This document shows, piece by piece, positions 3,006 through 55,422 of a DNA stretch of 64,000 bases. The notes under the pieces were generated by a model. That model did not search any database. It was not told the origin of the DNA and was given only the letters and a program-made list of their open reading frames with translations. Both the position numbers and the translations under genes were made by a program. Numbering within the stretch: the stretch's first letter is position 1; each line of letters starts with the position of its first letter. This DNA is from Geosiphon pyriformis uo1 (taxonomy: Eukaryota; Fungi; Glomeromycota): positions 523,107-587,106 of the forward strand of contig JAAOMT010000213.1 in the NCBI GenBank assembly GCA_016748015.1, written 5' to 3'.

Positions 3006-3009
3006 GTGG

Positions 3010-3845
3010 TGTTACTCATAGAAATATAGGAAATATATTAGCATAATTATTAGCCAATCAGAAGTAGATATAGTAAATGTGGAATTTCAAGATTCCAGGA
3101 ATTACAGGATTCTCACACAAGGAATTGCAGAATTCCAGAATTCCAGGATTCCTCTTGAAGGAATTGTAGGATTCTAGGAATTCTGGAATTCCTGTCATAA
3201 AGAATTGAGGAATTGAGAAATCTTAATTATGTATATATAGCAGTAGCATTAGAAGCTGAAAAAAAAGGATCTCTGAGTTTAAATGTAATCTAAGCAACTC
3301 TCCAAATCACAGTCATCTAATAAATAACTATTTGTTATCTCAAAAAACCACTTCTACTATCAACTATTTATGTTGATAGTAATTGATACTTAACTACACT
3401 AGAACAATAGTTTTTGATTACGGTTATTGATGGGATATTAAAGTTGCACACTATTTTGGCTTATTTCTTTATATTTCTTTATTTTCTTTATTTTTCTTTG
3501 ATTTTTGTTATTGTGCACTAACCAATTGATTAAAAGTGCTGATTACTGACATCAAGGATTGCCTGGTAAAAGACCCCTGCGAGTGGGTAGAACATGTACA
3601 GAAGATACAGATTACTTACCAGAGGATTGCCGGCCACCAAGCCGAGAAAAGAATTAACAAACTTGTGAGTCTGAAAAGCTATGAATAAAACAACTATTGA
3701 ATCTCTGTCCATTATACAAAGAACTCATTTGGAAAACCTTCAGATACCAACCACTTAAAGATATTATCAACAATGTGAGTAGTTTTTGAGCACCAAGTTA
3801 TGGGTTTATTATTTAATCCAACAACAGAAATTGTCACCTGTAATA
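3010..3845 (+). repeat. 5' LTR of B1
   Basis: TGTTACTCATAG...CCTGTAATA (decayed CA); GGAATTCC-type array at about 3080-3215; TATA GTATATATAG at 3231. Confidence 0.95.
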
Positions 3846-3847
3846 TT

Positions 3848-3864
3848 TGGTGCTCCCTGTAAGG
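3848..3864 (+). promoter_or_regulatory. Primer-binding site of B1
   Basis: TGGTGCTCCCTGTAAGG, 2 nt (TT) after the LTR; B2 copy reads TGGTGCTCTCTGTGAAG; primer tRNA not assigned (Ile-UAU or elongator Met are candidates by recollection). Confidence 0.85.
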
Positions 3865-3907
3865 TATAATCCTACAGAGAACCAGCACCAACAAACACCA
3901 TCCAAAA

Positions 3908-4995
3908 GTGGCAGAATTAGAAAATATAAGAGCAAATCATTTAGAATTTGCGAAATTCTTATTTCAACACTATTGTCAACACTTGAGATTAAACCACAAT
4001 TATATATCCACCAAATCAGCCTTTAATTTCTATGTCAACAAAAAGATTTCCTTTTTGTTAGGAACACCAGTGAATACTAAATCAGCAAGAGAAACTTTCT
4101 ACAGAGAATTAATTCAAAACACCAACCTACCAACAAATCATAATTTTACATCCATTATTACTGAGATTAACAAAGAAATTGAACATCACACCCAACAAAG
4201 ATATCCAATTACATACACTAGTAAAGACAAAGAAAAATTACAAACACCAGCAGTAACTCCCAGAAAAATACAACCACCTACTTGGAAGAAGACAAAAGTT
4301 GAATCACCAACCAATCCATCTTATTACTATACACTCGGAAGCACCATCAACATTTTATCAACAGATGCATCCACATTAAATGCAACATCAGCATTTGGAT
4401 GATTCCCATTCCAAAGTAAACAAAAGAAAACAGAATTATTAGGACCATATAGCAAATACTTCAAAGGATTTAAATCACAATCACCAATGCCATCAGGAAT
4501 TTGATCACCGCCACCTCAACCAGATTTTGGAACCACTACCCCATAGGAACTATTTGAAGAAGAAAAGAAAGAAGAATCAAAAGATCAAAAATTTATTTAC
4601 CAAAACCCAATCACTGAAAACCCGGAAGTTGAAACACCGAATCTTCAAATCCAGCAAAATTTAAATTTAGAAAACCCAGAAATCAAAACCCTGAATATTC
4701 AACCATCACCAAATTAGAACAATCAGAACTCCAATCTAATTAATCAACCAGACTTACTTCTCATTATCATCATTAACCCACCACCAGTTGAACTGATTGG
4801 CCAGCCACTACAACAATCACACCAGCAGATTCAACAGCCACTAATACCACTTTAACAACCACCACAACACAACTTAGATCCAATGGCATATGCACCAATA
4901 GCCAAACTTGAGAAATTCACTGGCAAAGAGGATGACACTTAAGCCTGAATTAATGATGTCGCCAAAGCAATTACTGCCAATAACTGGAATGACGC
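3908..4995 (+). pseudogene. B1 gag-pol segment 1 (N-domain, linker, capsid start)
   Basis: GTG start; MAYAPIAKLEKFTG...ANNWND, broken by the A1 insertion. Confidence 0.85.
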
Positions 4996-6010
4996 TGTTA
5001 CTGGAGGTTTTTGGTCTCTTTTCTTAAATGTTGGTAATGTTAATTTGCTATAAATTCACATTTTCAGGAAGTAGTTGAACCTCCAATAACTGAATTTATC
5101 TTCAAATTATCTCCTATAATTTGAACTGCTGGGCTTATAAGTAGAATGGCCAATTCTTTGCCAGTTACTTTATGTAGTTATGTTGTAGTAAATGTCAACT
5201 CTTTCCCAGGAATTGCTTGTCTGGAAGCTCACTAAAAATGTGTAGTTACTTTGCTGTAAAAGTCAACTCTTCTACAGAAATCTTGTCTGTAGACTACCCT
5301 AATGATTGTAATAAGAAAAGAAAAGAAAAAAATAAAAGAAATGTAAAAGAAATAGAATTTTCTCAAGAGAAACGTTTTCTATCCAGGCCTGGAGTCACTA
5401 ACAGTTTACTGAAATTGGTAGCTAATCAATTTCAAAATGTTAGTTGGGTTTTGAAGATTTTTTCAAGTGCAATAATTAAAGAATTTGGTTTTTTTTCAAA
5501 TTATTTGATATTTATTTCTTTTTGTGTATAAGAACGGTTTTAAAAAATAAATCTAAAGTAAGATACATTTTCCAGAAGAGAAAAGCTCTTTTTTTATACA
5601 ACTTGTTGTAGTACTAGTCTATAAACTTGCACTTTTTCTCTTTGCTCAAATTTCGGCAAACTAAAGATACATTTGATGAACTACAAGTTATTTTGCTGAA
5701 CTATTGATTAATTTGGGTGAACTATTCATAATTTTGGCGAATTTCTATAAATTTCGGCGAATTTTTTATAAATTTCGGCGAATTTCTGTAAATTTCAGCG
5801 AATTTTTGAATGTTACAAAGTTCAGGGTATTGTGTAATTTGATCATTCTACTCTCTGTTATTCTAATTAGATTATTTTAATTGAATTGTGATATGTAATG
5901 ATTGATTAAATAATAAATGATAATTTGAAATAATATTAATATACTGATTAATTATAGGAATTATAAGAGTAATTTCATGCTAATTAATAGCTAAAATTCT
6001 ACTGGTAACA
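4996..6010 (-). repeat. 3' LTR of A1
   Basis: TGTTAC...GTAACA termini; near-identical to 23832-24808. Confidence 0.95.
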
Positions 6011-6698
6011 TAATCTTCTTCTCAAGACTGAGCTCCGTCGAAGTTCAAACACTATCTGTAATATTGAGATAGTGATCTAAAATAATTGAAGTAATCTGGT
6101 CTGAAAATTGTTGAAATTTCAGTTCTGTGAGTTTGCCAATGTATTGGACTTTCATTGGTTGCAGTATTGGATTTTGTAGAACATTTTCACAAGTATTAAA
6201 CAAGTCATAGAGTTTAAGAGCTGCTCTAAGTTTGTAGTGAGTGTTTGTTGGTCCAGCTGCTGTTTTGAATTCATTGTGGATTTGTTTTTGTATAGCTTCA
6301 GGAGAGAGATTTGTTGCTTCAAGTTCTAGTTTTCGTTTATAAAGTGTTTTTCCAATGTGAAAGTATTTATAGATAGAGGTGTGTTCATTGTTTTGTTCAT
6401 TGAGAAGTAGTAAAAGTTTTTGTTGCATTGTAGCATTTGGTGGAATGTCAATAAGGGCAATTAAAAGATTTTCTTCTAGTGCTTGCTTCAAAAGTCTTGG
6501 TAATCTATTCTTAAAGTGACTTCTTGTTTTTTTTCTATAGAGGTGATAGTTCTGTAAATGTTTTGCTACTGGGGCTGTGGTTTTTTTTTGAATGTAATTA
6601 ATTTGACTTTCATTAATCGTTATAGATAAGTCAGGAAGTGTTTTCAAGGCTAACATTAATTTTTGGGATATTTGTTAAATGTTTCGGGAAATAATTAT
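5991..6698 (-). pseudogene. Accessory ORF3 of A1
   Basis: Colinear with A3 ORF3 53346-54053; start decayed to ATA, internal stops. Confidence 0.8.
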
Positions 6699-6841
6699 GA
6701 TAAAATTGACTATTTATGAAAAGAAAGAATAAAGAAAATTATTTTTGGATATGGGGTTTTTATTTGTTTTTGGGTTTGGGTGTTTTGTAATTATTTACTA
6801 TTTTTGTCTTTTTTGTTTTTATTAGAGAATTATTGTAAAAT

Positions 6842-8227
6842 TTAAGTGTTCAAGTTTGGTTGTTGTTCTATTATAATTATTGGTTCTAAATTTTAGGGAA
6901 TATCTTCAGAATTAATTAAAGGGGAATGTATACCAATTTGTGGAATTAATGGTTCAGAATTGTTTCTGGAATGATAGTGTTTCAATCTGTTTCTATGTGC
7001 AACTTTTGCTAATATTTTGTTATTAAGTCTTAACTTATATGATCTATTGCCTAGAATTTCATAAATATAAAATGGTCCATCCTATTTGTTTTCAAATTTC
7101 CCACTCCATTGTTTTTCAGCCTTAGTTCTGTGTAAGAGAACTTTATTTCCAACTTTAAATTCGTTGGTAATAGATGGTAATTTGTTGTCATGTTTTTCTT
7201 TTTGTTGAGCTTGGGAATGTTCAATATGAGTTGCTGCTATTCTTTTTTTTCCTTCTAGTGTACTAAGAAGAGTGTAGGCTCTTCTTTGGAGTGTCTTTTG
7301 AAAGTTTTCTTCATTGATTGGTTGCACTGGGTATGTTTCCACTGTGAAATTAATTGGTAATGTTGCTGTTCTTCCATAAGTAAGATCAAATGGTGTGTGT
7401 TTCATAGTATCTTGTTTTAGTGTTCTGTATGCTAGTAACACTGATGGAATAAAGATATCCCATTCCTGCTCAAAGTCTGTTGAGACTTTGGCTAAAGATT
7501 TACACAATGTTCTGTTGAAACGTTTTACAAGTCCATTTGTTTGAGGGTAATAAGGTAATGATAGAGGTCTTTTGATATTGAACCGTTTACAAATTTCTTG
7601 TATTAAGTTGTTCACAAAATGTGTTCCTTGATTAGATAAGAGTTCAATTGGGCATCCATGTCTACAGATAATGTTTTCATAGATAAAATTTGCTACTGAT
7701 TTTGTGTCTACTCTTTGGATGGCTCTAGCTTTAGGCCATTTGGTAAGATAATCTACTGCAACTGCAATATAACAATTTTCTTGGATTGTAATAGGTAATG
7801 GTCCAACTAAATCAATTCCAACTCTGTCAAAAGGTTGTCCAACTTTGATTGGATTTAAAGGTTCTGTGGGGCGAGTTCCTCTTTTTTTTTAACAGTTATC
7901 ACAAGATTCTACATATTGTCGAATGTTTTTTTGCATGTGAGACCAAAAATAATGTTCAAGGGTTCTTTGAATTGTTCCCTCTTTTCCCAAGTATGCTAAA
8001 GACGGATCTGTGTGCATGTTGTATAAAATTGTTTCTTTTTTATTCTCTTGTACTAATCTGAGTGGCTGGTTTGGTTTTCTGTGATTTTTATAATAGATTT
8101 TGTTCTGGTGTATGAAATATTGTTTTAATTGGTGTTGTAAGTGGTGTTTTTTACTTGGAGACCAGTTTTCTGGCATGGTAAGAGTCTCCAAATAATTTTT
8201 AAGATTGCTGTAATTTCTGGGATTCAT
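6842..8227 (-). pseudogene. Integrase ORF of A1
   Basis: MNPRNYSNLKNYL start, HHCC, DDE core, KWDGPF-type C-domain. Confidence 0.9.
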
Positions 8228-8284
8228 TTTTGTTTGGTTATTTTGTTGGTAAGTTGGTAAGTTGTGGTGGAATTATTGTTGGTA

Positions 8285-11177
8285 TTAATCTTGTCTTATT
8301 CTTGAGAGGCTATCAACATTAGTATGTAGTTTTCCTGGTTTGTGATGTACAATATATCTGTAGTCTGCTAGGAAGTCATTCCATTGAGACTGTTTGGCAC
8401 TTTGTTCAGTTTTCTTTTTATTGAGCCATTTGAGGCCAATGTTGTCTGTTATTATGTCAAATTCTTTTCCATTCTTCAGATATTGTTGAAAATGTTTAAG
8501 ACCCTAAATAACTGCGGCAGCTTCTAATTCAGTTGAACTGTATTTTAGTTCTGTTGGTTTGAGTGTTCTACTAGCATAAGCAATGACTTGTTCTTGCCCC
8601 TTTTCATCTATTTGTGATAAGATGGCACCAAATGCTATGTGTGAAGCATCAGTGGCTAGTTGAAATTGTTTGTTGAAGTCTGGGTAAATAAGAACTGGAG
8701 CTGTTGTTAGCTTTGTTTTGAAGGTTTCAAATGCTTTTTGTTGTTCTTCAGTCCATTTGTATGGCACATTTTTATTGGTGAGATAATTGAATGGTTTGGC
8801 AATTTCTGAGAATTCTTTGATGAATTTTTGATAATAGGAGGCTAATCCTATAAATCTTCGTAGCTCTGTGGTATTTTTTGGGGTTTGGAAGTTTTTGACA
8901 GCACTAATTGTTTCAGGGTTTGGTTTGACTCCATCTTTGCTAACCATGTATCCAAAAAAGATTAAGCTTGTTTTTCCAAAGTGACATTTCTCAATATTCA
9001 ATTTTAATTCTGCTTTCTGTAGTCATTGAAAAACTTCTCGCAGATAAATAAGATGGGCTTCAAAGCTTGGTGAGTACACATCAGTGTCATCAAGGTAAAC
9101 AACTACTGATTACCATAAGAGTCCTTCATATACAACATCCATGAGTCATTGGAATATTGCTGATGCATTGCAAAATCCAAAAGGCATAATATTGAACTCA
9201 TAGTTTCCTCTTTGGGTGGTGAATGCTGTTTTGGGTCAGTCTTTTGGGTCCATTTCGACTTGCCAGTATCCACTTTCCAAGTCTAAAGTTGAGAAGAACT
9301 TGGCTTTTCCTAGAGCATCTAGCATGTCATCAATTCTTGGAAGAGGGTAGGCATCTCCAATTGTAACACTATTCAATTGTCTATAATTGACACAGAATCT
9401 GATTTTTCTATTTTTCTTTTTAACTAAAACTACTGGTGAAGCCCAAGGACTTCTTGATGGTTGAATCAATCCATTATTGAGCATTCTTTGGACCTCTTCT
9501 CTGATAAATTGGTGGCTGGCAGGTGGCATTCAATAGACTTGTTGATGTTTTGGTGGAGCATCTCCTGTATGGATCTGATGTTGAACAATGTTTGTTTTTC
9601 CCAAGTCATTGTTGTCTTTTGCAAATATATCTGCAAATTCAGCTATTAATTGTTTTAATTGTCTTTGTTGTTGAGGTTCTAAGAGACCCATATTGATTCA
9701 AGAGAGTTTTTCTTCCAACAAGTGGTAGTTTTCAGTAGTGGAAATAATATTTGGATTTGGAAGTAGAGTGTGCTTTACAATTTCGATGAAATTAGAGACA
9801 ATTTGAGGATTTTCATCTTGAAAGATATTGCTGTGTATGATTCCAATTTCTAATTTGTTTAATAAGACAATAGGGTAATTATTAAGGTTGTAGAATGTAA
9901 CTCGAATTTTTTTCATTCCTTTGGAAATATAAACGTTTGGAATTGATATTTCATGCTTCAAACAAATTTGTTCATTGGATTCAAAGATTTGTTGGGTAGT
10001 AGTGGGTTTTAAGCAAGTGTAAATTTTGTGATGTTCTCTAAAAAGTGAAATGGTAATTGGTTGAGGAAGTTGAAGAATCTGGTGAGATTCATTTTGTATA
10101 TTAAAAGCTATGTTTACTGGAACTGTAAATTGTCTAGTTGAACCGAAACCTTGAGTTCCTTTTTCACTTTTTCCCAATTGTTTTCTGTTGTTTACTGATT
10201 GTAAACCCGAAATGTTGATTAAGGGTAAGTAAATTGCTTGAGCAATTTTTTCAGCATGTTCAATTTTGAATGATTTGTCTGTCTCATTCTGTAACATGAT
10301 AGTAATGTCTCCAGTGTATTCTGCATCTATAACTCCTCCTCTAATATTGATTCCTTTGCTTGCCAATAATAATCTGAAGGCAATTTGAACCATTGCTCCT
10401 GGTGGAATTTTAAGAGCAATTTTTAGATTGATTTTTGTCAAAGACTTTGGTTAGAGAATCAAAGTATCTTTTCCTGGGTATCTTAGATCATATCCAGCAT
10501 CAATTTCGTGTGCTTTTTCTGGTCTGATTCCTTGGCCATGGTTGTCAAAATATTTAAGTTGTAGAGGTGGTTGCTTTTCAAGAAGATAGATGGGAGTGGT
10601 TGGTAGTTCTTCTACTAGTTCAGATACTCCAAATTCGATTTCATTTTCATTATTTTCATCTGGCAGAGAAATGCTAAGAGCATAACATTCTAAACACCAT
10701 TGGTCATCACAAGGCATGACACATTTTTCACACAATTGAATGTTCATTTGCTCTAATTATTGAATTTGAGCTTCTTTGGTCGGATATGTGTGGCTTGCAA
10801 TTTGGTGGTAGGTTTCTACTTTATCTTCATAATCAAATCCAGCTAATTCCATGGTATACTCAATATATTCAGCTTCTTTCATTTGGTGGACATCTTCTTG
10901 GGTGGCTTTATTGATCAATACTATTGCTAGGTCAAAAATCATTTCAGCATTATGAGGGTAGTAGTAAAGTTTATTGAAAGCACTGTTGTATGCTGTATTA
11001 AATGGTGTTCCTCTTCTGACTTTTTCCGAAATTAATAGAGCATATTGACAAATTTGATCACATACTTCTCCTCTCATTGCTACATCAATCCAATTGCATT
11101 CTTCTAGTAGCATTTCTCTACATGTAAGGCAAGGTATATTGTCCCATTTTCTACTTCTTTTTGGAGATCTAAATCAT
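8285..11177 (-). pseudogene. A1 pol 3' part (Cys-rich domain, dUTPase, RT, RNase H)
   Basis: AGYDL, GVIDAEYTG, GFGST; SPWASPVVLV, YLDD; ATDASH, VIAYASR. Confidence 0.92.
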
Positions 11178-12193
11178 TGTTACCGGAGGTTTTTGGTCTT
11201 TTTTCTCGAATGTTGTTAATGTTGATTTGTTGTGAATTCACATTTCTAGGAAGTAGTTGGACCTTCAGTAACTGAATTTATCTTCAAATTATCTCTTATA
11301 ATTTGAACTGCTGGGCTTATAAGTGGAATAGCCAATTCTATGCCAGTTACTTTGTATAGTTACGTTGTTGTAAACGTCAACTCTTTCCCAGGAATTGCTC
11401 ATCTGGAAGCTCACTAAAATGTGTAGTTACTTTGCTGTAAAAGTCAACTCTTCTACAGGAATCTCATCTGTAGGCTACCCTAATGATTATAGTAAGAAAA
11501 TAAAAAGAAAATAAAAGAAATGTAAAAGAAATAGAATTCTGTCAAGGGAAACGTTTTTAATCCATGCCTGAAGTCACTAACAGTTTATTCTTCTCCTTCT
11601 TTTTTCGAATTACTTAATCCTTTGAAATTGGTAGCTAATCAATTTCAAAACATTAGTTGGGTTTTGAGAATTTTTCCAAGTGCAATAATTAAAAAATTTG
11701 GTTTTTTTTTTGAATTATTTGATATTTATTTTTTTTTGTGTGTGTAGAAATGGTTCTAAGTAATAAATCTAAAGTAAAATACATTTTCTCGAAAAGAAAA
11801 GCTCTTCTTTTATACAACTTGTCATAACACTATTCTATGAACTTGAACTTTACTATTTTCTACAATTTCGCTGAACTAAAGATACATTTCGGCAAACTAC
11901 AAGTTATTTCTGCAAACTATTAGATATTTCGGTGAACTATTAATTATTTCGGCAAATTTCTACAAATTTTGGTGAACTTTTGAATGTTACATAGTTTGGG
12001 GTATTGCATGATTGATTATCACAATTAGGTTATATTTGTGTTGTATACAAATTGGGTTATTAATTAAATGATAATTTCGAACATTTTGCTAATGTAATAA
12101 GTAATAATTTGAAACAATAATATATGCTAATTAATGATAGGAATTATAAGATAATTTTATGCTAAATAATATCTCTAATTTTGTCTGGTAATA
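11178..12193 (-). repeat. 3' LTR of A2
   Basis: Matches 20071-21053; PPT GAGGAGGAAG adjacent on the minus strand. Confidence 0.93.
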
Positions 12194-12865
12194 TAACTTC
12201 CTCCTCAAGACTGAGCTCCATCGAAGTCCAAGTACTGTCTGTTATTTCCAGATAATAATCCAAAATTATTGAAGAAATTTGGTCTGAAAATTATTGAAAT
12301 TTCCAATGTATTGAATCTTCAAAGGTTGAAAAATTGGGTTTTGTAGTACATTTTCACAGGTGTGAAATAGGTTATAAAGTCTAAGAGCAGCTCTGAGCCT
12401 GTAGTGACTGTTTGTTGATTCAGCTGTTGTCTTGAATTCATTGTGGAGTTGTTTCTAAATGGTTTTTTTTGTGAGGTTTGCTGTTGTAAGTTCCAGTTTT
12501 CATTCATAGAGTGTTTTTCTAATGTAGAAATATCTATAAATTGGAGGATATTCAGTGTTTTTCTCTTTAAGACACAGTTGAAGTCTTTGTTGAATTGTAG
12601 AATTTGGTGGAATACTAATCGGAATGAGCATTAGGTTTTCTCTTAAAGCAAGCTTTAAAAGTTCTGGCAGGTGAATTCCAGAATAACTTCTTGTGTTTTT
12701 CTTATATGGGTGATATTTTTGTGAATTTGGGGCTAAATTTGTAACTACTTTTGTTTGGGTATAATTAATGTGGTTTCCAGTAACAGTAATGGATAATTCG
12801 GGTATTGTTTTTAAAGCTAATATTAGTTTTTGGGATAATTGTTGAATGTTTTGAGGAATAGTCAT
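12162..12865 (-). pseudogene. Accessory ORF3 of A2
   Basis: MTIPQNIQQLSQKLILALKTIPELSITV...IYRYFYIRKTLYE, homologous to A3 ORF3. Confidence 0.8.
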
Positions 12866-12971
12866 TATAAGAGATTTGAAATAAAAGAAAATTATTTTTG
12901 GTGTATGGGTTTTTATGTTATTTTTGTTTTGATTGTTTCTAAATTATAAGGGAATAACTAGTAAAATTAAA

Positions 12972-14356: not shown

Positions 14357-14407
14357 TGTTTGTTGGTTGTTTTAATTGGTTAAGTTGAGTGTTGGTTTTT
14401 GTGTTTT

Positions 14408-42384: not shown

Positions 42385-42397
42385 AAGGAGAGAATAA

Positions 42398-43214
42398 TGT
42401 TATTCATAGAAATATAGGAAATATATTAGCATGATTATTAGCCAATTAGAAGTAGACATAGTAAATGTAGAATTCCAGGATTCCTCTTAGGAATTGCAGG
42501 ATTCCAGAATTTCAGAATTTTTCTTAAAGGAATTGCAGGATTCTAGGAATTCTAGGATTTCTGTCATAAAGAATTGAGAAATTAAGGAATTTCAATTATG
42601 TATATATAGCAATAGTATTAGAAGCTAAAAAGAAAAGACCTCTGAGTTTAGATGTAATCTAAGCAACTCTCCAAATCACAGTCATCTAATAAATAACTAT
42701 TTGTTATTTCAAAAAACCACTGTTATTATCAACTATTCATGTTGATAGTAATTGATACTTAACCACACTGGAACAATAGCTCTTGATCACAACTATTGAT
42801 AGGATACTAAAGTTGCATACCGCCTTGACTTATTTCTTTATATTTCTTTATTTTCTTTATTTTTCTTTGATTTTTGTTATTGTGCACTAACCAATTGATT
42901 AAAAGCGCTGATTACTGACATCAAGAATTGTCTGGTAAAAGACCCCTGTGAGTGAATAGGACATGTACAGAAAATACGGATTACTTACCAGAGGATTACC
43001 AGCCACCAAGCCAAGAAAAAAATTGACAGACTTGCAAGTCTGGAAAGCTATAAATAAAACAATTATTGAATCTCTGTTCATTATACAAAGAACTCATTTG
43101 GAAAACCTTCAGATACCAACCACTTAAAGATATTATCAACAACACGAGTAGCTTTTGAGCACCAAGTTATGGGTTTATTATTTAATCCAACAACAGAAAT
43201 TGTCACTTGTAACA
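42398..43214 (+). repeat. 3' LTR of B1
   Basis: Preceded by PPT AAAAGGAGAGAA; matches 3010-3845. Confidence 0.95.
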
Positions 43215-45111: not shown

Positions 45112-46076
45112 TGTTACCAGTAAAATTTTAGCTATTAATTAGCATGAAATTACCCTTATAATTCCTATAATTAATTAGTATATTAATATCATTTCAAATT
45201 ATTATTTATTATTTAATCAATTATCACATATCACGATTCAATTAAAAGAATCTAATTAGTATAACAGAAAGTAGGATAATCAAATTACACAATATCCTGA
45301 ACTTTGTAACATTCTAAAATTCGCCGAAATTTACAGAAATTCGCCAAAATTATGAATAGTTCACCCAAATTAATCAATAGTTCAGCGAAATAACTTGTAG
45401 TTCATCAAAATATATCTTTAGTTCACCAAAATTTGAGCAAAAAGAAAAAGTGCAAGTTCATAGACTAGTACTACAACAAGTTGTATAAAAGAAGAGCTTT
45501 TCTCTTCAAGAAAATGTATCTTATTTTAGATTTATTTCTTAAAACCGTTCCTACACACAAAAAGAAATAAATATCAAATAATTCGAAAAACCAAATTTTT
45601 TTAATTATTGTACTTGAAAAATCCCCAAAACCCAACTAACATTTCGAAATTGATTAGCTACCAATTTCAGTAAACTATTAGTGACTTCAGGCCTGGATAG
45701 AAAACGTTTCCCTTGACAGAATTCTATTTCTTTTACATTTCTTTTATTTTTATTTTCTTATTACAATCATTAGAGTAGCCTACAGATAAGATTCCTGTAG
45801 AAGAATTGACTTTTACAGCAAAGTAACTACACATTTTTAGTGAGCTTCCAGATGAGCAATTCCTGGGAAAGAGTTGATGTTTACTATAATGTAACTACAT
45901 AAAGTAACTGGCAAGAAATTGGCCATTCCACTTATAAGCCCAGCAGTTCAAATTATAGGAGATAATTTGAAGATAAATTCAGTTATTGGAGGTTCAACTA
46001 CTTCTAGAAAACGTGAATTTGCAACCAACAGACAGTTACAACATTCAAGAAAAGAGACCAAAAACCTCTGGTAACA
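45112..46076 (+). repeat. 5' LTR of A3
   Basis: TGTTACCAG...CTGGTAACA inverted termini; TATA-like GTATAAAAG at about 45483. Confidence 0.96.
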
Positions 46077-46078
46077 TT

Positions 46079-46096
46079 TGGTGCTCTCCCATAGAA
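46079..46096 (+). promoter_or_regulatory. Primer-binding site of A3
   Basis: TGGTGCTCTCCCATAGAA after a TT spacer; primer tRNA not assigned (Thr is a candidate by recollection). Confidence 0.85.
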
Positions 46097-46121
46097 ATAA
46101 CACAGTGACAACAAATTCAAA

Positions 46122-49100
46122 GTGGCAACCACACCAGACACAGCAACTTTAGAGTATTACCAGTCAATTTACACTCACTGCAAACAAAGATTCAACATTC
46201 CAGACGGAATTGAAGTTGTAAAGAAATCAGTATACCAATACATTAAAAACCGTATCAACAATTATCTTTTTGGAAACTACAACATTTCAGAAGTTAAAAG
46301 CAACCTCTACAATAATTTAGTGCACTATTCACAATTAGAAACAGAAGACCTAAACAGTAAAACACTTGCTACCTACTTCCAAAAACTTAATTTTAACATT
46401 ATTGAGTATTGTGAAGAAAAATACCCAGTACAGTCTAAATACTCTTTTGATTTTAAATCAGAGACAGAAACAGGCAACAAAGGCAAACAAAGATTGAAGC
46501 AATACTCAAAAACCACTCCAAACACTCCAACACTACAAAAGACACCTGCCAAACACTTGCAAACACCTGAACAAGGAACTAGTGTCAAATTACTACTTTC
46601 TATTACATCATTTCCAATTTCACTTGTTCAACCACAAACACCAAATTCTCCACTTAACTGCTTCTCCAGACTAGAAGATTTTCAGTCACCTAGAAACCCT
46701 ACTTAACAGCAGAAACCAATATCAACAAGTGCTAACATTATTGATTACTTACAGGAAAACGAAAGTAATCATTCAGAAAGCTTGGAAAGTGAAGAAACTG
46801 AATCAGAACCAAAAGAAATTACAGAAACCGAAAAAGAAATGGCAACTGCTTACATTGCAAAAATCCCAGAATTCACTAGTGAAGACAATGATACTAGTCC
46901 TCAAGAATGGCTTGACAAAGTTCTAAAAGCAGGAGATGCAAATGGTTGGATTGCAGCAAGAATGCTCAAAGCAATTCTCTACTTTCTTCAAGGAACAGTA
47001 GAAGAATGGTTTGAAAATTTAGAAGAACCATTTGAAAACTGGCAAGCATTCAAAGATACTTTTCTACAACAATTCACTGACAACAATACCTCTATCACTC
47101 TCAGAAACTGCTTTTGCAATATCAAACAAGAAACATCTGAAACTGTTATGACCTACCTTAAAAGATTTAACAAACTTCTCAGACAAATCCGACAATTGGA
47201 AACCAATGACTACTATTCTGATGCTCAAATTCTGGATCAGTTTATAGCAGGGTTAAAAGACAAACTGATTAAGAAAGTCTGTCCACATGCTCCAGCAGAC
47301 TTAGCAACTGCTATTAGACATGCAAAAAGCTATGAGATGACAATGGAAGAAGCAAATTACACCAAGCTTGTAAATCTTGCAATTGGAGAAACCAGCTCAG
47401 CAGCTGAAGAAAAGATAGACCAACTTACAAAGAAAGTTGAAAGCTATTTTACAAACCAACAACAATAGCAGCAACAACCACAAAGATATTAACTATTACA
47501 ACGACGCAACCAAAACAATTTTGGATTACCATCCAACAACCAATCTCAAAATTGTCATTATTGTGGAATTCCAGGACACTAGAAATGAGATTGTAGAAAA
47601 TTGCAAAGAGACCAACAAAACAGGAGTAATCAACATTACTCTTCACCACAACAATCCTATTACCAATTTTCACCACCAACCTATTATTCACCAAGACCAC
47701 AAAATCAAAACTACTATCTACTAGCTCCACAATCAATGCAGCAACAATATCAGCAACCTTTACCAATTCAGCCATATCAGACACCACCCACTCAACAATA
47801 TTAAGTACCAGCAAGAAGATTGGTTCAACATAACCAATTCACACCCCAAAATCAATTGCAGAGTAACCACAACAGAATTAATCCAAATAACCAGTTGGTT
47901 CTCTAAAATCTTGGTCAGCAAAGACCCAATCACTATCACACTCAACCCAGTTATTTTACAATACCAGAGGAATCGGATTTTCAACAAACTGCACTTTCTG
48001 AAGGTGAAGTTGCAGTACTAAGATCAAACCCTTCCAACCACACCATTCCACCAGCTCAAATTGCCCAAAATGCCAATTTGTTAGATATATTTCCATTTGA
48101 ATTTGAAGCAAATGAATCACCATTTCTGCTTAGTAATGCAGCAGTCAATGAACAGAAAGCAATTACTGCTATGTACACTGAAGTTACAGTAAAAGAAAAA
48201 CCCATTCGCTTAATCTTAGATAGTAGATCGGCTGGAAGTATCATCACTTACCAGCTGATGCAACAACTCAAACGAAACGTAGATAGACCAGCTCAAACAA
48301 TTATTGTCACAGCTGATAGTATAAAGAAAACTCCAGTGGAAGAAATTGATGATTTCCTCTTTATAATTGATGAAATCACCATTCCAGTTAAAGTTCTTGT
48401 CATGGATGTACTCCAATATCAAGCTCTAGTCGGAAATGATTGGCTTCTCAAGGCCAATGCAAACCTGAACTGGGAAACTTAAGAACTTAAAATCTCATAC
48501 CAAGGACAATATACCATCGTACCTGTAACTTGTGGTATCTTTAACAAATAATTAGAAAAAGCTCCAGTAATTGAATTTGAAGAAGAGAAGGAAATGCCAC
48601 TTATTGAAATCTACATGGTTCTTGGATCACCATCCAATTGGGCTGAGGAAACAGAACAAGAGATTTTTGAAGAATCAAGGGGATGGAAGAAAGTTAGATA
48701 TTCCATACTAGAACCACGAAAAGAACCACTATACATTCCACTAAAATGCAAAAATTGCAAAAAGAAGCTTTTATCTATGGGAGCCTGCATCTCCCCAGAA
48801 GAGGAATACGAAACTCACACTTGTTATTTCTGCAAGGCATGTCATAGAGAACAATTTGAATTCCCAAAGAGAAGTGGAAAATGGGACAAAATTCTTTGCC
48901 TTACATGTAGAGAAATGCTACCAGAAGAATGCAATTGGATTGATGTAGCAATGAGAGGAGGAGTATGTGATCAAACCTGTCAATATGCTCTAGTAATTTC
49001 GAAAAAAGTCAGAAGAGGAACACCATTTGATGCAGCATACAACAGTGCTCTCAATAAACTTTACCACTACCCTCATGATGTTGAAATGATTTTTAACCTA

Positions 49101-51743
49101 GCAATGACATTGATCAATGGAGCCACCCAAGAAGATGTCTGCCAAATGAAAGAAGCTAAATATATTGAGTATACCATGGAATTAGCTGGATTTGATTATG
49201 AAGATAAAGTAGAAACCTACCACCAAATTGCAAGCCATATATATCCGACCAAAGAAGCTCAAATTCAATGATTAGAGCAAATAAACATTCAATTGTGTGA
49301 AGAATGTATTATGCCTTGTAACGACCAATGGTGTTTAGAATGTTATGCTTTTAGCATTCCTCTGCCAGATGAGAATGATGAAAATGAAATCGAATTTGGA
49401 GTAGCTGAACTAAGAGAAGAACTACCAACCACCCCCATCTATTTTCTTGAAAAGCAACCACCTCTACAACTTAAATATTTTGACAATCATGGCCAAGGAA
49501 TCAGACCAGAAAAAACACACAAAATTGATGCTGGATATGACTTAAGATACTCAGGAAAAGATACTTTGGTTCTTCAACCAAAGTTTTTGACAAAAATCAA
49601 TCTCAAAATTGCTCTTGAAATTCTACCAGGAGTAATGGTTCAAATTGCCTCCAGATCATCATTGGCAAGCAAAGGAATCAATATTAAAGGAGGAGTTATA
49701 GATGCAGGATACACTGGAGACATTACCATTATGTTGCAGAATGAGACAGACAAACCATTCAAAATTGAACATGCTAAAAAAATTGCTCAAGCAATCTACT
49801 TATCCTTAATCAACATTTCGGGTTTACAATCAGTAAACAACAGAGAACAATTGGAAAAAAGTGAAAGAGGAACTCAAGATTTTGGTTCAACTGAACAATT
49901 TACAGTTCCAGTAAACATAGCTCTTAATACATAAAATGAATCTCACCAGATTCTTCAACTTCCCCAGCCAATTACCATTTCACTTTTTGGAGAACATTAC
50001 GAAATTTACACTTGCTCAAAACCCACCACTACACAACAAATCTTTGAATCCAATGAACAAATCTGTTTGAAGCATGAAATCTCAATTCCAAACGTTTATA
50101 TTTCCAAAGGAATGAAAAAAATTCGAGTTACATTCTACAACCTTAATAATTACCCTATTGTCTTATTAAACAAATTAGAAATTGGAATCATACACAGCAA
50201 TATTTTTCAAGATGAAAACTCTCAAATTGTCTCTAATTTCATCGAAATTGTAAGGCACACTCTACTTCCAAATCCAAACATTATTCCCACTACTGAAAAC
50301 TACTACTTTTTGGAGGAAAAACTTTCTCAAATCAACATGGGTCCCTTAGAACCTTAACAACAAAGACAATTGAAACAATTGATAGCTGAATTTGCAGATA
50401 TATTTGCAAAAGACAACAATGACTTGGGAAAAACAGATATTGTTCAACATCAGATCCATACAGGAGATGCTCCACCAAAATGTCAACAAGCTTATCGAGT
50501 ACCACCTGCCAGCCACCAATTTATCAGAGAAGAGGTCCAAAGAATGCTCAATAACGGATTAATTCAACCATCAAGAAGTTCTTGGGCCTCACCAGTAGTT
50601 TTAGTTAAAAAGAAAAACGGAAAAATCAGATTCTGTGTTGATTATAGACAACTGAATAGTATTATAATTGGAAATGCCTACCCTCTTCCAAGAATTGATG
50701 ACATGTTAGATGTTCTAGGAAAAGCCAAGTTCTTCTCAACTTTAGACTTGGAAAGTGGATACTGGCAAGTCGAAATGGACCCAAAAGATCGACCCAAAAC
50801 AGCATTTACCACCCAGGAAAGAAACTATGAATTCAATGTTATGCCTTTTGGACTCTGCAATACACCAGCAACATTCCAGCGACTTATGGATGTTGTATAT
50901 GAAGGACTCTTGTGGCAATCAGTAGTTGTCTATCTTGATAACACTGATGTATACTCACCAAGCTTTGAGACTCATCTCATTCACCTGTGAAAAGTTTTTC
51001 AATGATTACGGAAAGCAGAATTAAAGTTAAACATTGAGAAATGTCACTTTGGAAAAACAAGCTTGATCTTTCTTGAACACATAGTTAGTAAAGATGAAGT
51101 CAAACCAAATCCAGGAACAATCAGTGCTGTCAAAAACTTTCAAACTCCCAAAAATACTACAGAACTAAGAGGATTTGTAGGATTAGCCTCTTACTATCGA
51201 AAATTCATAAAAGGATTCTCAGAAATTGCTAAACCACTTAATTATCTTACCAACAAAAACGTACCATACAAATAAACTGAAGAACAACAAAAAGCTTTTG
51301 AAACTCTCAAAACAAAATTGACAACAGCCCCAGTTCTTGTTTACCCAGACTTCAACAAACAATTTCAATTAGCCACTAATGCTTTACACATAGCATTTGG
51401 TGCCATCTTATCACAATTGGATGAAAATGGCCAGGAACAAGTTATTGCCTATGCCAGCAGAACACTCAAGCCAACAGAACTCAAATATGGCTCAACTGAA
51501 CTGGAAGCTGCTGCAGTCATCTGGGCTCTCAAACACTTTCAACAATATCTAAAAAATGGAAAAAAATTTGACATAATAACTGACAATATTGGCCTCAAAT
51601 GGCTTAATAAAAAAAAAACTGAACAAAGTGCCAAACAGTCTCAATGGAATGACTTCCTAGCAGATTACCAATACATTGTACATCATAAACCAGGAAAACT
51701 ACACACCAATATTGATAGCCTCTCAAGAATAAGACAATATTAA
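46122..51743 (+). pseudogene. A3 gag-pol polyprotein, single frame, about 1873 aa (N-domain, CA, NC, PR, Cys-rich, dUTPase, dUTPase-like, RT, RNase H)
   Basis: Ten ORF fragments all in one frame; CHYCGIPGH knuckle, LILDSRSAG, AGYDL/RSSLA/GVIDAGYTG/KIAQ/RGTQDFGST, RT, DSLSRIRQY stop. Confidence 0.95.
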
Positions 51744-51811
51744 TATCAACATTAACACCAACAAAATACCAACAAACTTAACAGCAGAACCAAACAACAA
51801 GATTACCAACA

Positions 51812-53198
51812 ATGAATCCAGAAAATTACAACAACATCAAAAAACTATTTGGAGACTCTCACTATACTGGAAAATTGATCTCCAAGTGAAAAACATCGAT
51901 TACAACATCAATCCAAACAATATTTTATACATCATAACAAAATATATTACAAAAATTATAAAAACCCAGACCAACCACTCAGATTAGTACAGGAAAATAA
52001 AAAAGAAACAATTCTATACAATATGCACACAAATCCTTCTTTAGCACACTTGGAAAGAAATAAAACAATTCAAAGAACCCTTGAACATTATTTTTGGCCT
52101 CACATACAAAAAGACATTCGCCAATATGTAGAATCTTGTGATAGTTGTCAAAGAAGAGAAGAAACTTGTCCCACAGAACTTTTAAATCCAATCAAAGTTG
52201 GACAACCTTTTGACAGAGTTGGAATTGATTTAGTCGGACCATTACCTATCACAACCCAAGGAAATCATTATATTGCAGTTGCAGTGGATTATCTTACCAA
52301 ATGGCCTGAAGCTAGAGCCATCCAAAGAGCAGACGCAAAATCAGTAGCAAATTTCATCTATGAAGACATTATCTGTAGACATGGATGTCCAATTGAACTC
52401 TTATCTGATCAAGAAACACATTTTGTAAACAACTTGATACAAAAAATTTGTGAATGATTCAATGTCAAAAGACCTCTATCATTATCTTATTATCCTCAAA
52501 CAAATGGACTTGTAGAATGTTTCAACAGAACATTGTGTGAATCTCTAGCCAAAGTCTCAACAGACTTTGAACAGGAATGGGATATTTTTATTCCATCAGT
52601 GTTACTAGCATACAGAACACTAAAACAAGATACTATGAAACACACACCATTTGATCTTACTTATAGAAGGACAGCAACATTACCAATTAATTTTACAGTA
52701 GAAACATACCCAGTGCAACCAATTAATGAAGAAAACTTTCAAGAAACACTCCAAAGAAAAGCCTACACCCTTCTTAGTACACTGGAAGGAAAAAGAAGAA
52801 TAGCAGCAACTCATATTGAACATTCTCAAGCTCAACAAAAAGAAAGACATGACAACAAATTACCACCTATTACCAACAAATTTAAAGTTAGAAATAAAGT
52901 TCTCTTACACAGAACTAAGGCTGAAAAACAATGGAGTGGAAAATTTGAAAACAAATGGAATGGACTATTTTATATTCACGAAATTCTAGGCAATAAATTA
53001 TACAAGTTAAGACTTGATGACAAAATACTAGCAAAAGTTGCATATGGAGACAGATTGAAACACTATCATTTCAGAAACAATCCTAAACCATTAATTCCAC
53101 AAATTGGTACACATTCCCCTTTAATTAATCCTGAAGATATTCCCCGAAATTTAGAACCAATAATTATAATAGAACAACAACCAAACTTGAACACTTAA
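51812..53198 (+). pseudogene. Integrase ORF of A3
   Basis: ATG at 51812, one extra A near 51840; GIDLVGP, LLSDQ, CDSCQ; no chromodomain. Confidence 0.93.
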
Positions 53199-53345
53199 AT
53201 TTTACAATAATTCCCCAATAAAAACACAAAGAGAAAAAAAAATTGTAAATAAATTACAAAAACACCCAAACCCAAAAACAAATAAAAACCCCATATCCCA
53301 AAAATAATTTTCCTTATTTTCTTTTCATAATTAGTCAATTTTATT

Positions 53346-54053
53346 ATGATTATTCCCCGAAATATTCAACAAATATCCCAAAAGTTAATGTTAATTTTAA
53401 AAACACTTCCTGACTTATCCATAATGATTAATGGAAGTCAAATTAATTACATTCAGAAAAAAACCACAGCTCCAGTAGCAAATCATTCACAGAACTATCA
53501 CTTCTATAGAAGAAAAACAAAAAATCACTCTGAAAATAGGTTATCAAGACTTTTGAAGCAAGCACTAGAAGAAAATCTTTTAATTGCCCCTATTGACATT
53601 CCACCAAATGCTACAATACAACAAAAACTTCTACTACTTCTCAATGAACAGAACAATGAACACACCCCTATCTATAAATACTTTCACATTGGAAAGACAC
53701 TTTATGAATGAAAACTGGAATTTGAAGCAACAAATCTCACTCCTGAAGCTATACAAAAACAAATCCACAATGAATTCAAAACAGCAGCTGAACCAACAAA
53801 CACTCGCTACAAACTTAGAGCAGCTTTTAGACTCTATAATTTGTTTAATACTTGTGAAAATGTTCTACAAAATCCAATACTACAACCAATGAAAATCCAA
53901 TACATTGGCAAACTCACAGAACTAAAATTTCAACAATTTTCAGACCAGATTACTTCAATTATTTTAGATCACTATCTCAATATTATAGATAGTGCTTGGA
54001 CTTCAACGGAGCTCAGTCTTGAGGAGGAGATTATGTTACCAGTAGAATTTTAG
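53346..54053 (+). pseudogene. Accessory ORF3 of A3 (235 aa, one CGA-to-TGA stop), unknown function
   Basis: ATG at 53346; single frame running through the PPT and 20 nt into the 3' LTR. Confidence 0.85.
54021..54030 (+). promoter_or_regulatory. Polypurine tract of A3
   Basis: GAGGAGGAGA, 3 nt upstream of the 3' LTR. Confidence 0.85.
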
Positions 54054-54981
54054 CTATTAATTAGCATAAAATTATCCTTATAATTCCTATAATTAATTAG
54101 TATATTAATATTATTTCAAATTATTACATATCACGATTCAATTAAAAGAATCTAATTAGTATAACAGAAAGTAGGATAATCAAATTACACAATACCCTGA
54201 ACTTTGTAACATTCTAAAATTTGCCGAAATTTACAGAAATTCGCCGAAATTATGAATAGTTCACCCAAATTAATCAATAGTTCAGCGAAATAACTTGTAG
54301 TTCATCAAAATGTATCTTTAGTTTGCCGAAATTTGAGCAAAAAGAAAAAGTGCAAGTTCATAGACTAGTACTACAACAAGTTGTATAAAAGAAGAGCTTT
54401 TCTCTTCAAGAAAATATATCTTACTTTAGATTTATCTTTTAAAACCGTTCTTATACACAAAAAGAAATAAATATCAAATAATTCGAAAAACCAAATTTTT
54501 TTAATTATTGTACTTGGAAAATTCCCAAAACCCAACTAACATTTCGAAATTGATTAGCTACCAATTTCAGTAAACTGTTAGTGACTCCAGGCCTGGATAG
54601 AAAACGTTTCCCTTGACAGAATTCTATTTCTTTTACATTTTTTTTATTTTTCTTTTATTTTCTTATTACAATCATTAGGGTAGCCTACAGATGAGATTCC
54701 TGTAAAAGAGTTGACTTTTACAGTAAAGTAACTACACATTTTTAGTGAGCTTCTAGACGAGCAATTCCTGGGAAAGAGTTGACATTTACTATAACGTAAC
54801 TACATAAAGTAACTGGCAAGGAATTGGTCATTCCACTTATAAGCCCAGCAGTTCAAATTATAGGAGATAATTTGAAAATAAATTCAGTTATTGGAGGTTT
54901 AACTACTTCTAGAAAACGTGAATTTGCAATCAACAGACAGTTACAACATTTAAGAAAAGAGACCAAAAACCTCCAGTAACA
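54034..54981 (+). repeat. 3' LTR of A3
   Basis: Matches 45112-46076, differing mainly by transitions. Confidence 0.96.
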
Positions 54982-55422
54982 TCGTGGTCATAAAATTAAG
55001 GAGACAAAGAGTCTTGACTATTAAAAATAAATTTACTTAAAAACAATTTGTTTTTTTTAATATTATATCTAATATTAAAATTACTTATTTGTCAAAAAAC
55101 TATCAAATAATTAAAGATTTTATTATTTAAAAAATGTTTTAACAGTACTTATATTATTTTTATTTATAATATTAAAATTAATTTTAGTCTTAAAATTAAC
55201 AAAGTTCTTAAATAAATTAACCAAAAGACTAATAAAACTTTTAATAACTTTTATTATAATAATAATAATTATTTTTTATATTAAAATTTTTGCACAAAAC
55301 TTTATTCAAAAAAAAATAATCAGAATAATTAAAAAACCAATTAATTTAATAATAAACTTAATTAAAATAGTTAATTCAAAATTTTAAATTTTAAAAAATT
55401 TAATATAAAATTAATTACAAAA

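What the first reader, a model, noticed from the sequence alone, without database searches (positions are those of the whole stretch)
3006..54985. All five resolvable LTR-element insertions have 4-bp TSDs consistent with a central CpG (NCGN)
Seen: A1 ACGC/ACAC (4992, 24809); A2 TCAT/TTGT (11174, 21054), the two deamination products of TCGT; B2 TCGG/TTGG (29390, 39575); A3 TCAT/TCGT (45108, 54982); B1 GTGG/GTGG (3006, 43215), compatible with a decayed GCGG. The host sequence rejoins only with a 4-bp duplication. CG is visibly scarce in this AT-rich DNA, and no wider consensus is evident. Known: sequence-specific 4-bp targets exist in insect errantiviruses (ZAM duplicates CGCG), and most fungal Gypsy elements make 5-bp TSDs. 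Inference: two divergent families that lack a chromodomain integrate at CpG, possibly methyl-CpG. That would steer them into already methylated transposons and explain the deep nesting. Seven of the ten TSD copies have lost the CG (counting B1 as inferred), implying these sites were methylated.
Basis: partly seen in the sequence, partly recalled or inferred. Interest (0 to 1): 0.92.

Follow-up and report, generated by a model that had tools for sequence, protein, structure and literature searches.

The report
Fungal Gypsy elements insert at CpG
Four of the five nested retrotransposons in this window, and seven of eight related young elements in the fungus Rhizophagus irregularis, inserted exactly across a C-G step, so their integrase picks CpG; there is no evidence that it reads methylation.

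Summary
Four targets were CpG-centred: ACGC, TCGT, TCGG and TCGT. In each, the two copies, or a copy and a paralogous empty site, differ only by CG>TG or CG>CA. In this DNA C>T changes outnumber T>C five to one. The fifth target (B1, GTGG/GTGG) shows no sign of ever having held CG, so "all five" is an overclaim. At least four of five by chance has p about 1e-5, even with all lost CpG restored.

Independent support comes from Rhizophagus irregularis. Two young Gypsy families there, forming one integrase clade, have TSDs ACGT, ACGG, CCGT, CCGG, ACGC, GCGA/GCGC and GCGG, plus one exception (CTGC). Three elements from another clade have CTAG, CTAT and ATAT. All 16 insertions have a pyrimidine-purine centre.

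The best reading is a lineage-specific integrase preference for a central CpG. This sharpens the central flexible-step rule of retroviruses with 4-bp duplications and parallels the Drosophila ZAM group (CGCG). Methyl-CpG reading and "this explains the nesting" remain untested. TSD CpGs decayed at the same rate as LTR CpGs, and CpG is now 3.5 times rarer in the nest than in the adjacent genes.

The parts
1..3005 (+). C0: 3' part of a third Gypsy family, cut by the window start. Integrase is at about 323-1506. The 3' LTR probably starts at 2094, 2124 or 2164 (TGTTAY) and ends ...CCCATAACA at 3005, directly abutting the GTGG at 3006-3009.
3006..43218 (+). B1, the oldest element and host of A1 and B2. 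TSD GTGG at 3006-3009 and 43215-43218. LTRs 3010-3843 and 42398-43214 (90% identical). The centre is TG in both copies, so a CpG target is not shown.
4992..24812 (-). A1, inserted in the gag-side region of B1. TSD ACGC (4992-4995) / ACAC (24809-24812), which is GTGT/GCGT in element sense. LTRs 4996-6010 and 23832-24808 (93%). The paralogous site in B2 reads ATGC.
11174..21057 (-). A2, inserted in A1. TSD TCAT (11174-11177) / TTGT (21054-21057). LTRs 11178-12194 and 20071-21053 (93%). The paralogous sites in A2 (about 17285) and A3 (about 48860) both read TTGT. The inferred target is TCGT.
29390..39578 (-). B2, inserted in the reverse-transcriptase region of B1. TSD TCGG (29390-29393) / TTGG (39575-39578). 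LTRs 29394-30258 and 38672-39574 (94%). Its own homologous site (33082-33085, reverse strand) reads TTGG. It carries the 445-aa integrase ORF 30999-32336.
45108..54985 (+). A3, inserted in a tandemly duplicated 2.65-kb unit. TSD TCAT (45108-45111) / TCGT (54982-54985). LTRs 45112-46077 and 54034-54981 (96%). Gene order is gag, protease, dUTPase, RT, RNase H, integrase.
30405..30800 (-). ORF3 of B2, downstream of the integrase. B1 has its copy at 41854-42174 (+). The A family carries an unrelated-looking ORF3 at 6048-6674 (-) and 53331-54032 (+). The FYLGQ motif is shared with the ORF3 of all R. irregularis relatives. There is no chromodomain and no methyl-binding domain.

Best explanation
These are Ty3/Gypsy LTR retrotransposons without a chromodomain and with a dUTPase between protease and RT. 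Their integrase cuts the target with a 4-bp stagger and strongly prefers a CpG step exactly on the dyad of that stagger (N-CG-N).

Shown:
- The element ends, the 4-bp duplication and the CpG centre for 4 of 5 window insertions.
- The same CpG centre in 7 of 8 insertions of two young R. irregularis families, which form one integrase clade.
- A TA centre in a separate integrase clade.
- A pyrimidine-purine centre in all 16 insertions.

Inferred: as in the PFV and MLV intasomes, the target must be sharply bent and unstacked at the central step. In this lineage the two symmetric inner integrase protomers additionally select C at TSD position 2 on each strand, which yields the palindromic CG. The preference is strong but not absolute (CTGC in R. 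irregularis; probably GTGG for B1).

After insertion both TSD copies sit in DNA subject to heavy C>T decay, fastest at CpG. That decay turned 5 of the 8 CG copies into TG or CA.

Whether the enzyme distinguishes methylated from unmethylated CpG is open.
For: TSDs and LTR ends. 4-bp overlap against paralogous empty sites, and ancestral CG inferred from CG/CA/TG triplets. C>T polarity (50 C>T/G>A against 10 T>C/A>G) and a 4-fold higher rate at CpG. Binomial tests: >=4 of 5 gives p=1.2e-5 at a generous CG frequency of 0.04, and p=0.004 even when conditioned on a YR centre.

R. irregularis loci: L012 ACGT, L017 ACGG, L020 CCGT, L021 CCGG, L015 ATGC/ACGC, L018 GCGA/GCGC, L019 GCGG, L022 CTGC. CG frequency in those loci is 0.024, so 7 of 7 has p=5e-12. 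The TA-type controls, L001 CTAG, L013 CTAT and L014 ATAT, show the result is not a property of the genome or of my method.

Tree: the CG-type families form one clade (SH-aLRT 100). The TA types lie in a separate clade (95). The window's B2 integrase falls on the CG side of that split.

The symmetrised 11 CG sites show T avoided at TSD position 0 and A at +3, and T enriched at -3 / A at +6. This is the pattern reported for retroviruses with 4-bp TSDs (PFV consensus KWK\VYRBMWM, central YR unstacked; PMC4422553). The closest solved relatives of the integrase are Ty3 (7q5b) and PFV (3l2q).
Against: There are only five insertions for the window's own families, and one of them is not CG. The source genome is not in any searchable collection, so the family-wide census could not be done. 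The R. irregularis families are only 44-49% identical in integrase to B2, and B2's position in the tree is on a long, poorly resolved branch. No residue could be tied to the specificity: the PFV Ala188-equivalent is Thr or Ser in both CG-type and TA-type families.
Confidence: 0.8

Rival explanations
1. One reading: the integrase (or a cofactor) prefers methylated CpG specifically. New copies are therefore funnelled into already methylated transposons, which builds the nest.
For: All five insertions are in repeats with CpG o/e of 0.05-0.25. R. irregularis has bimodal CpG methylation concentrated on TEs (PMC8647823). A review cites Kitamura, Lee & Coffin 1992, whose title is on the effect of CpG methylation on retroviral integration in vitro (reference list of PMC5408687; the paper itself could not be read). 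The tolerated exceptions are TG-centred (L022 CTGC; B1 GTGG), and the sister clade uses TA. Thymine carries the same 5-methyl group as 5mC, so a methyl contact could underlie all three centres; this is my inference. The CG-type R. irregularis elements are themselves CpG-poor (o/e 0.54-0.75), whereas the TA-type elements are at 1.18-1.28.
Against: Nothing measured here bears on methylation at the moment of insertion. TSD CpGs decayed at the same rate as LTR CpGs (5 of 8 copies against q=0.59). No MBD, SRA or other known methyl reader is found in any ORF, and the ORF3 model has no structural match. Flanks of the R. irregularis CG-type insertions are often not CpG-depleted (o/e 1.11, 0.97, 1.3, 0.84). 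Nesting is equally explained by selection against genic insertions.
Confidence: 0.15
2. There is only the generic preference of 4-bp-stagger integrases for any flexible pyrimidine-purine central step, and the run of CGs is luck.
For: All 16 centres are YR, including TA, TG and CG. PFV-type intasomes select YR (PMC4422553).
Against: CG makes up at most 17% of YR steps in the window, even with decay restored, and 10% in the R. irregularis loci. Conditioned on a YR centre, 4 of 5 has p=0.004 and 7 of 7 has p=1.4e-7. The centre dinucleotide also follows the integrase phylogeny.
Confidence: 0.03
3. Artefact: the LTR ends are misplaced by a base or two, or mutation after insertion created the apparent CGs.
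For: A2's two copies differ at 2 of 4 positions. The elements are old (LTR identity 90-96%).
Against: The PBS and PPT fix the ends. Paralogous empty sites overlap both flanks by exactly 4 bp. Mutation runs C>T, not T>C, so CG is lost rather than made. The R. irregularis elements with 99-100% identical LTRs give perfect CG-centred TSDs.
Confidence: 0.01

Closest known systems
Drosophila errantiviruses and their two-ORF derivatives: gypsy, ZAM and Idefix subgroups with TATA, CGCG and ATAT targets (PMC5408687; PMC3276498)
   Same: Ty3/Gypsy elements with 4-bp TSDs. They show a short palindromic, pyrimidine-purine-centred target motif that differs between integrase subgroups. Here a CG clade and a TA clade sit side by side in one fungal genome.
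   Different: Only the central CG is fixed here; the outer two positions vary (A/C/G/T-CG-N), so the motif is not CGCG. The LTR ends are TG...CA rather than the errantivirus type. The host is a fungus with CpG methylation, not Drosophila. No env-like gene was recognised. A dUTPase is present in the window's families.
Retroviral intasomes with a 4-bp stagger (PFV, MLV): central flexible YR step, consensus KWK\VYRBMWM (PMC4422553; PMC4005685)
   Same: 4-bp TSD. YR at the dyad in 16 of 16 insertions. T disfavoured at TSD position 0 and A at +3, with T at -3 / A at +6 enriched. PFV integrase is the second closest solved structure.
   Different: Retroviral preferences are weak and statistical. Here one YR step (CG, rare in the genome) accounts for 7 of 8 and 4 of 5 insertions.
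Arthropod Copia elements that captured a methyl-CpG-binding domain (PMC6673714)
   Same: A retrotransposon lineage proposed to be guided by CpG or methyl-CpG.
   Different: Those elements encode a recognisable MBD that binds methylated CpG-dense regions. Here no such domain exists, and the CpG lies at the strand-transfer dyad itself, so it is a catalytic-site preference rather than tethering.
Chromoviruses (fungal and plant Gypsy elements with an integrase chromodomain)
   Same: Fungal Ty3/Gypsy elements that accumulate in repeat-rich, silenced DNA.
   Different: No chromodomain. 4-bp TSD.

Membership tests
Ty3/Gypsy (Metaviridae) LTR retrotransposon | LTRs ending TG...CA with PBS and PPT; gene order gag, PR, RT, RNase H, IN | tested here: met
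   Pfam hits: Retrotrans_gag, Asp_protease_2, dUTPase, RVT_1, RT_RNaseH, Integrase_H2C2, rve, SH3_Tf2-1.
Chromovirus | Chromodomain at the integrase C-terminus | tested here: not met
   No PF00385 hit in any frame between the integrase SH3 domain and the 3' LTR of A1, A2, A3, B1 or B2, even at E<=1.
Errantivirus ZAM subgroup (CGCG target) | 4-bp TSD | tested here: met
Errantivirus ZAM subgroup (CGCG target) | Tetranucleotide CGCG as the preferred target | tested here: not met
   The targets are ACGC, TCGT, TCGG, TCGT; in R. irregularis they are ACGT, ACGG, CCGT, CCGG, ACGC, GCGM, GCGG. Only the central CG is constant.
Errantivirus ZAM subgroup (CGCG target) | Third ORF encoding an envelope protein (or descent from such an element) | tested here: inconclusive
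   An ORF3 exists but has no Pfam hit. Its model is an all-helical bundle with no PDB match.
Integrases with 4-bp stagger and central-YR preference (PFV/MLV type) | YR dinucleotide at the centre of the TSD | tested here: met
   16 of 16 insertions. The background YR frequency is 0.23.
Integrases with 4-bp stagger and central-YR preference (PFV/MLV type) | T avoided at TSD position 0 and A at +3; T/A enriched just outside | tested here: met
   Symmetrised counts for 11 sites: T is 3/22 at position 0; T is 13/22 at -3. The sample is small.
Methyl-CpG-guided retrotransposons (MBD-Copia type) | An encoded methyl-CpG-binding domain | tested here: not met
   No MBD or SRA hit in any ORF scanned, nor in the precomputed Pfam hits of the R. 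irregularis genes.
Methyl-CpG-guided retrotransposons (MBD-Copia type) | Preference for methylated over unmethylated CpG | not testable with these tools
   This needs methylome data on empty alleles or in vitro integration assays.
dUTPase-bearing fungal Gypsy elements | dUTPase domain between protease and RT | tested here: met
   PF00692 hits in A3 (49293-49934), B1 (27457-28656) and B2 (33819-34625).

The most novel reading that the evidence does not exclude
The integrase of this fungal Gypsy lineage reads the 5-methyl group of the pyrimidine at TSD position 2 on both strands. It would then accept 5mCpG (and, less well, TpG; TpA in the sister clade) but not unmethylated CpG. If so, host CpG methylation, laid down to silence transposons, would itself mark the landing sites. 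That would create self-reinforcing transposon nests and spare unmethylated genes.
Probability: 0.12. Interest if true: 0.85.

Novelty: new variant of a known kind. Interest (0 to 1): 0.6.

Why it matters
Sequence-specific target choice by LTR-retrotransposon integrases has been regarded as essentially an errantivirus peculiarity (PMC5408687). Here a fungal Gypsy lineage shows an equally sharp, phylogenetically structured choice: CG in one clade, TA in its neighbour.

Because CpG is also the methylation and hypermutation site in these fungi, the preference has three consequences:
- TSDs decay quickly, so TSD-based annotation tools that demand perfect duplications will miss many elements.
- The density of targets depends on how far the host DNA has decayed.
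- It gives a clean, testable system for asking whether an integrase can sense cytosine methylation. R. irregularis suits this, with published nanopore methylomes and young copies.

It also offers natural CG-type and TA-type integrase pairs for mapping the residues that read the central step.

Tried and rejected
1. Finding more copies of families A and B.
- An exact-pattern scan of metagenome contigs with the conserved A-family LTR end found nothing.
- Protein-guided scans of viral contigs returned only unrelated bacterial or phage integrases.
- The best protein relatives of the B2 integrase are only 45-50% identical.
The second allowed metagenome scan was not used, because the contigs of the relatives are too short (<9 kb) to hold both LTRs.

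2. RIP as the cause of the AT-richness: rejected. TpA is depleted (o/e 0.70) and CA/TG are enriched.

3. Single-strand-gap deamination at integration as the source of TSD mismatches. The strand prediction fits only 4 of 6 decayed copies, so there is no support.

4. A specificity residue. The PFV Ala188 / HIV Ser119 equivalent does not separate the CG and TA clades.

5. ORF3 as a targeting or methyl-reading module. It is present in both CG and TA families, has no Pfam hit and no structural match.

6. Organism identification. The best match is 57% to unnamed metagenome/Logan proteins. The named hits are Ganoderma (48%) and Halteromyces (38%). This points to an unsampled fungus. Nothing suggests human DNA.

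7. One look-up (P0301) found no record. Kitamura et al. 1992 could not be read.


Full report
WHAT IS IN THE WINDOW. The first 55 kb are a nest of degenerate Ty3/Gypsy LTR retrotransposons at about 33% GC. Pfam scans give the gene order gag, aspartic protease, dUTPase, RT, RNase H, integrase (H2C2 zinc domain, rve core, Tf2-type SH3). The layout is as follows.
- C0 (1-3005, + strand) is cut by the window edge.
- B1 (3010-43214, +) hosts A1 (4996-24808, -) and B2 (29394-39574, -).
- A1 hosts A2 (11178-21053, -).
- A3 (45112-54981, +) sits in a 2.65-kb unit that is tandemly duplicated at 55906-57673.
- Ordinary genes follow: an ERG4/ERG24 sterol-reductase exon at 60559-61131 and an LMBR1-like ORF at 63175-63918.

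Nothing suggests human DNA. The nearest relatives of the integrase come from Rhizophagus irregularis and soil metagenomes at 45-50% identity. The sterol-reductase exon was searched alone, by reference, with no exons joined. It is at best 57% identical to unnamed metagenome proteins and 38-48% to named fungi. The source is therefore an unsampled fungus.

CHECK OF THE OBSERVATION. The element ends do not depend on judgement. All LTRs begin TGTTAC and end GTAACA. Each 5' LTR is followed by T/TT and TGGTGCTC (primer-binding site). Each 3' LTR is preceded by a purine tract.

Three insertions lie inside other copies of the same families, so the paralogous copy serves as an empty site. In each case the two flanks overlap the paralog by exactly four bases. 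The same holds for A3 against the second copy of the tandem unit. The 4-bp duplication is therefore confirmed.

WAS THE TARGET CpG? LTR pairs differ by 291 transitions and 15 transversions. Changes polarised with four LTRs give 50 C>T/G>A against 10 T>C/A>G. The per-site C>T rate is 0.14 at CpG against 0.035 at CpA or CpT. CpG o/e is 0.28, CA and TG are at 1.28, and TA is at 0.70. This is methylation-type decay, not RIP. With that polarity the targets read as follows.
- A1: ACGC/ACAC with paralog ATGC. All three states derive from CG in one step, so the target was ACGC.
- B2: TCGG/TTGG with paralog TTGG, so the target was TCGG.
- A3: TCAT/TCGT, so the target was TCGT.
- A2: TCAT/TTGT with paralogs TTGT. 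CA and TG share only CG as a one-step ancestor, so the target was TCGT.

B1 is GTGG/GTGG and offers no evidence for CG. A CG target would give two TG copies only about 9% of the time. The result is four of five, not five of five.

The probability of four or more CG centres is 1.7e-8 at today's CG frequency. It is 1.2e-5 if every excess TG/CA is turned back into CG (frequency 0.04). It is 0.004 even if the centre is required to be pyrimidine-purine.

INDEPENDENT TEST IN ANOTHER GENOME. The source genome could not be found. I therefore fetched the loci of the integrase relatives annotated in R. irregularis DAOM 197198. They were chosen only by protein cluster, without any knowledge of their TSDs. 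All are young (LTR identity 93-100%) and all have 4-bp TSDs.

Two families share the PBS AAGTGGTGATTCCTGCCAGG and form one integrase clade (SH-aLRT 100).
- The P0030 cluster gives ACGT (L012), ACGG (L017), CCGT (L020) and CCGG (L021).
- The P0100 cluster gives ATGC/ACGC (L015), GCGA/GCGC (L018), GCGG (L019) and CTGC (L022).
That is seven CG centres and one TG, in loci where CG is 2.4% of dinucleotides and not depleted. Seven of seven has p = 5e-12.

Three elements of other families give CTAG (L001), CTAT (L013) and ATAT (L014). They lie in a separate, well-supported clade. The window's B2 integrase sits on a long branch on the CG side of that split.

The central dinucleotide is thus a heritable property of the integrase lineage. 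The window's two families behave like the CG clade. The L022 exception has 100% identical LTRs. It shows that TG is tolerated, which makes a true GTGG target for B1 the simplest reading.

MECHANISM. All 16 insertions have a pyrimidine-purine step at the dyad, against a background of 0.23. Pooling the 11 CG sites and symmetrising shows T avoided at TSD position 0 and A at +3, with T at -3 / A at +6 enriched. This matches what is reported for retroviruses with 4-bp duplications. In the PFV target-capture complex the DNA is severely bent and the central YR step is unstacked; the consensus is KWK\VYRBMWM (PMC4422553).

The closest solved relatives of these integrases are Ty3 (7q5b) and PFV (3l2q). 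I therefore infer the same geometry, with an added lineage-specific selection of C at position 2 on each strand by the two symmetric inner protomers. I could not identify the residues responsible. The PFV Ala188 equivalent is Thr or Ser in both clades. The only clade-specific difference near the active site is Ser against Thr before the second catalytic Asp.

THE METHYLATION CLAIM. Five of the eight CG-derived TSD copies have decayed. CpGs inside the LTR pairs have decayed with per-copy probability 0.59 (16 CG/CG, 38 CG/decayed and 16 TG/CA columns). The TSD CpGs therefore behaved like any CpG in the nest after insertion. This says nothing about their state when the element landed.

No ORF carries a known methyl reader or a chromodomain.

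CpG is now 3.5 times rarer in the nest (0.0072, o/e 0.25) than in the neighbouring genes (0.0253, o/e 0.80). A bare CG preference therefore does not push elements into old transposons. Selection against genic insertions explains the nesting as well. In R. irregularis the flanks of CG-type insertions range from CpG o/e 0.5 to 1.3.

Three points keep the methyl idea alive.
- R. irregularis methylates about 31% of its CpGs, mainly in TEs (PMC8647823).
- Thymine and 5-methylcytosine share the 5-methyl group, so the tolerated TG and the sister clade's TA could reflect a methyl contact (my inference).
- A 1992 study of CpG methylation and retroviral integration in vitro exists. I know it only from a reference list (PMC5408687) and could not read it.
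I put this idea at roughly 0.12-0.15.

COMPARISON AND NOVELTY. The nearest precedent is the Drosophila errantivirus group. Its three integrase subgroups use TATA, CGCG and ATAT, and that specificity has been called exclusive to them (PMC5408687; population data in PMC3276498). The present elements work like that, but they are not members of the group. Only the central CG is fixed, the termini are TG...CA, no env was recognised, and the hosts are fungi.

They are not chromoviruses, because they lack a chromodomain. They are not like the MBD-bearing Copia elements of arthropods (PMC6673714), because they lack an MBD.

Text searches found no report of CpG-centred TSDs in fungal Gypsy elements, though the library is incomplete. 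I rate this a new variant of a known kind.

LIMITS. The window's own families contribute five insertions. The R. irregularis sample is 11 insertions from five families in one assembly. The tree was a quick search, and the window's integrase is a decayed copy on a long branch.

Noticed in passing
window 2990-3015 and 43215-43218: The 3' end of element C0 (...CCCATAACA, 3005) is separated from the 5' end of B1 (TGTTAC, 3010) by just the 4 bp GTGG that also forms B1's TSD. Two different families therefore used the very same 4-bp target, one landing in the other's TSD copy. By chance this is about one in tens of thousands. It suggests either a strongly preferred site or integration attracted to an existing LTR-flank junction.
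   Followed up: partly
window LTR pairs (3010-3843/42398-43214, 4996-6010/23832-24808, 11178-12194/20071-21053, 29394-30258/38672-39574, 45112-46077/54034-54981): LTR pairs differ by 291 transitions against 15 transversions. Most of the C>T changes lie outside CpG (33 of 41 polarised C>T changes with scorable context), although the per-site rate is 4-fold higher at CpG. TpA is depleted, so this is not classical RIP. A general cytosine-deamination process acts on these repeats.
   Followed up: partly
window TSDs of A1, A3, B2; locus L015 4100-4103 / 13671-13674: In all four pairs where only one TSD copy lost its CG, the decayed copy lies next to the 5' LTR in element orientation, and the copy next to the 3' LTR keeps CG. 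This includes L015, whose LTRs are 99.6% identical. Four of four is not significant (two-sided p=0.125) but is unexplained. A single-strand-gap deamination model fits only 4 of 6 decayed copies.
   Followed up: partly
window 30405-30800(-), 41854-42174(+); L012 11343-11711, L015 12714-13124, L014 11474-11923, L013 11505-11852, L001 11323-11937: A small ORF3 downstream of the integrase is conserved across all the R. irregularis families and the window's B family (motif FYLGQ). It has no Pfam hit. Its AlphaFold model is a confident helical bundle (pLDDT 81) with no PDB match. The A family has a different-looking ORF3 (6048-6674 -, 53331-54032 +). Several R. irregularis copies also carry an antisense ORF just downstream of ORF3.
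   Followed up: partly
loci L012, L017, L020, L021, L015, L018, L019 versus L001, L013, L014: The CG-targeting R. irregularis elements are themselves CpG-poor (o/e 0.54-0.75). They show a TG excess (1.09-1.18) on the coding strand but no CA excess. The TA-targeting elements are CpG-rich (o/e 1.18-1.28). This could reflect avoidance of autointegration, heavier methylation of these families, or shared ancestry. Only two lineages were compared with two.
   Followed up: no
window 43380-45111 + 54986-55905 versus 55906-57673; also 57365-57686 versus 59135-59458: The DNA hosting B1 and A3 is a unit of about 2.65 kb, tandemly duplicated at 79% identity. It has long minus-strand ORFs without Pfam hits (43178-43660, 44000-44722, 57218-57679) and the lowest CpG o/e in the window (0.05). 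Its nature (an unknown repeat or a decayed gene array) was not resolved.
   Followed up: no
window 58001-60000: This stretch has only 11.6% GC. It lies between the repeat nest and the first ordinary gene.
   Followed up: no
locus L013 12049-19510: The 3' LTR of the R. irregularis element is split by a 7.5-kb insertion bounded by inverted repeats (CACTGGTCAAAATC...GATTTTGACCAGTG). The insertion is full of internal tandem repeats and is probably a DNA transposon.
   Followed up: no
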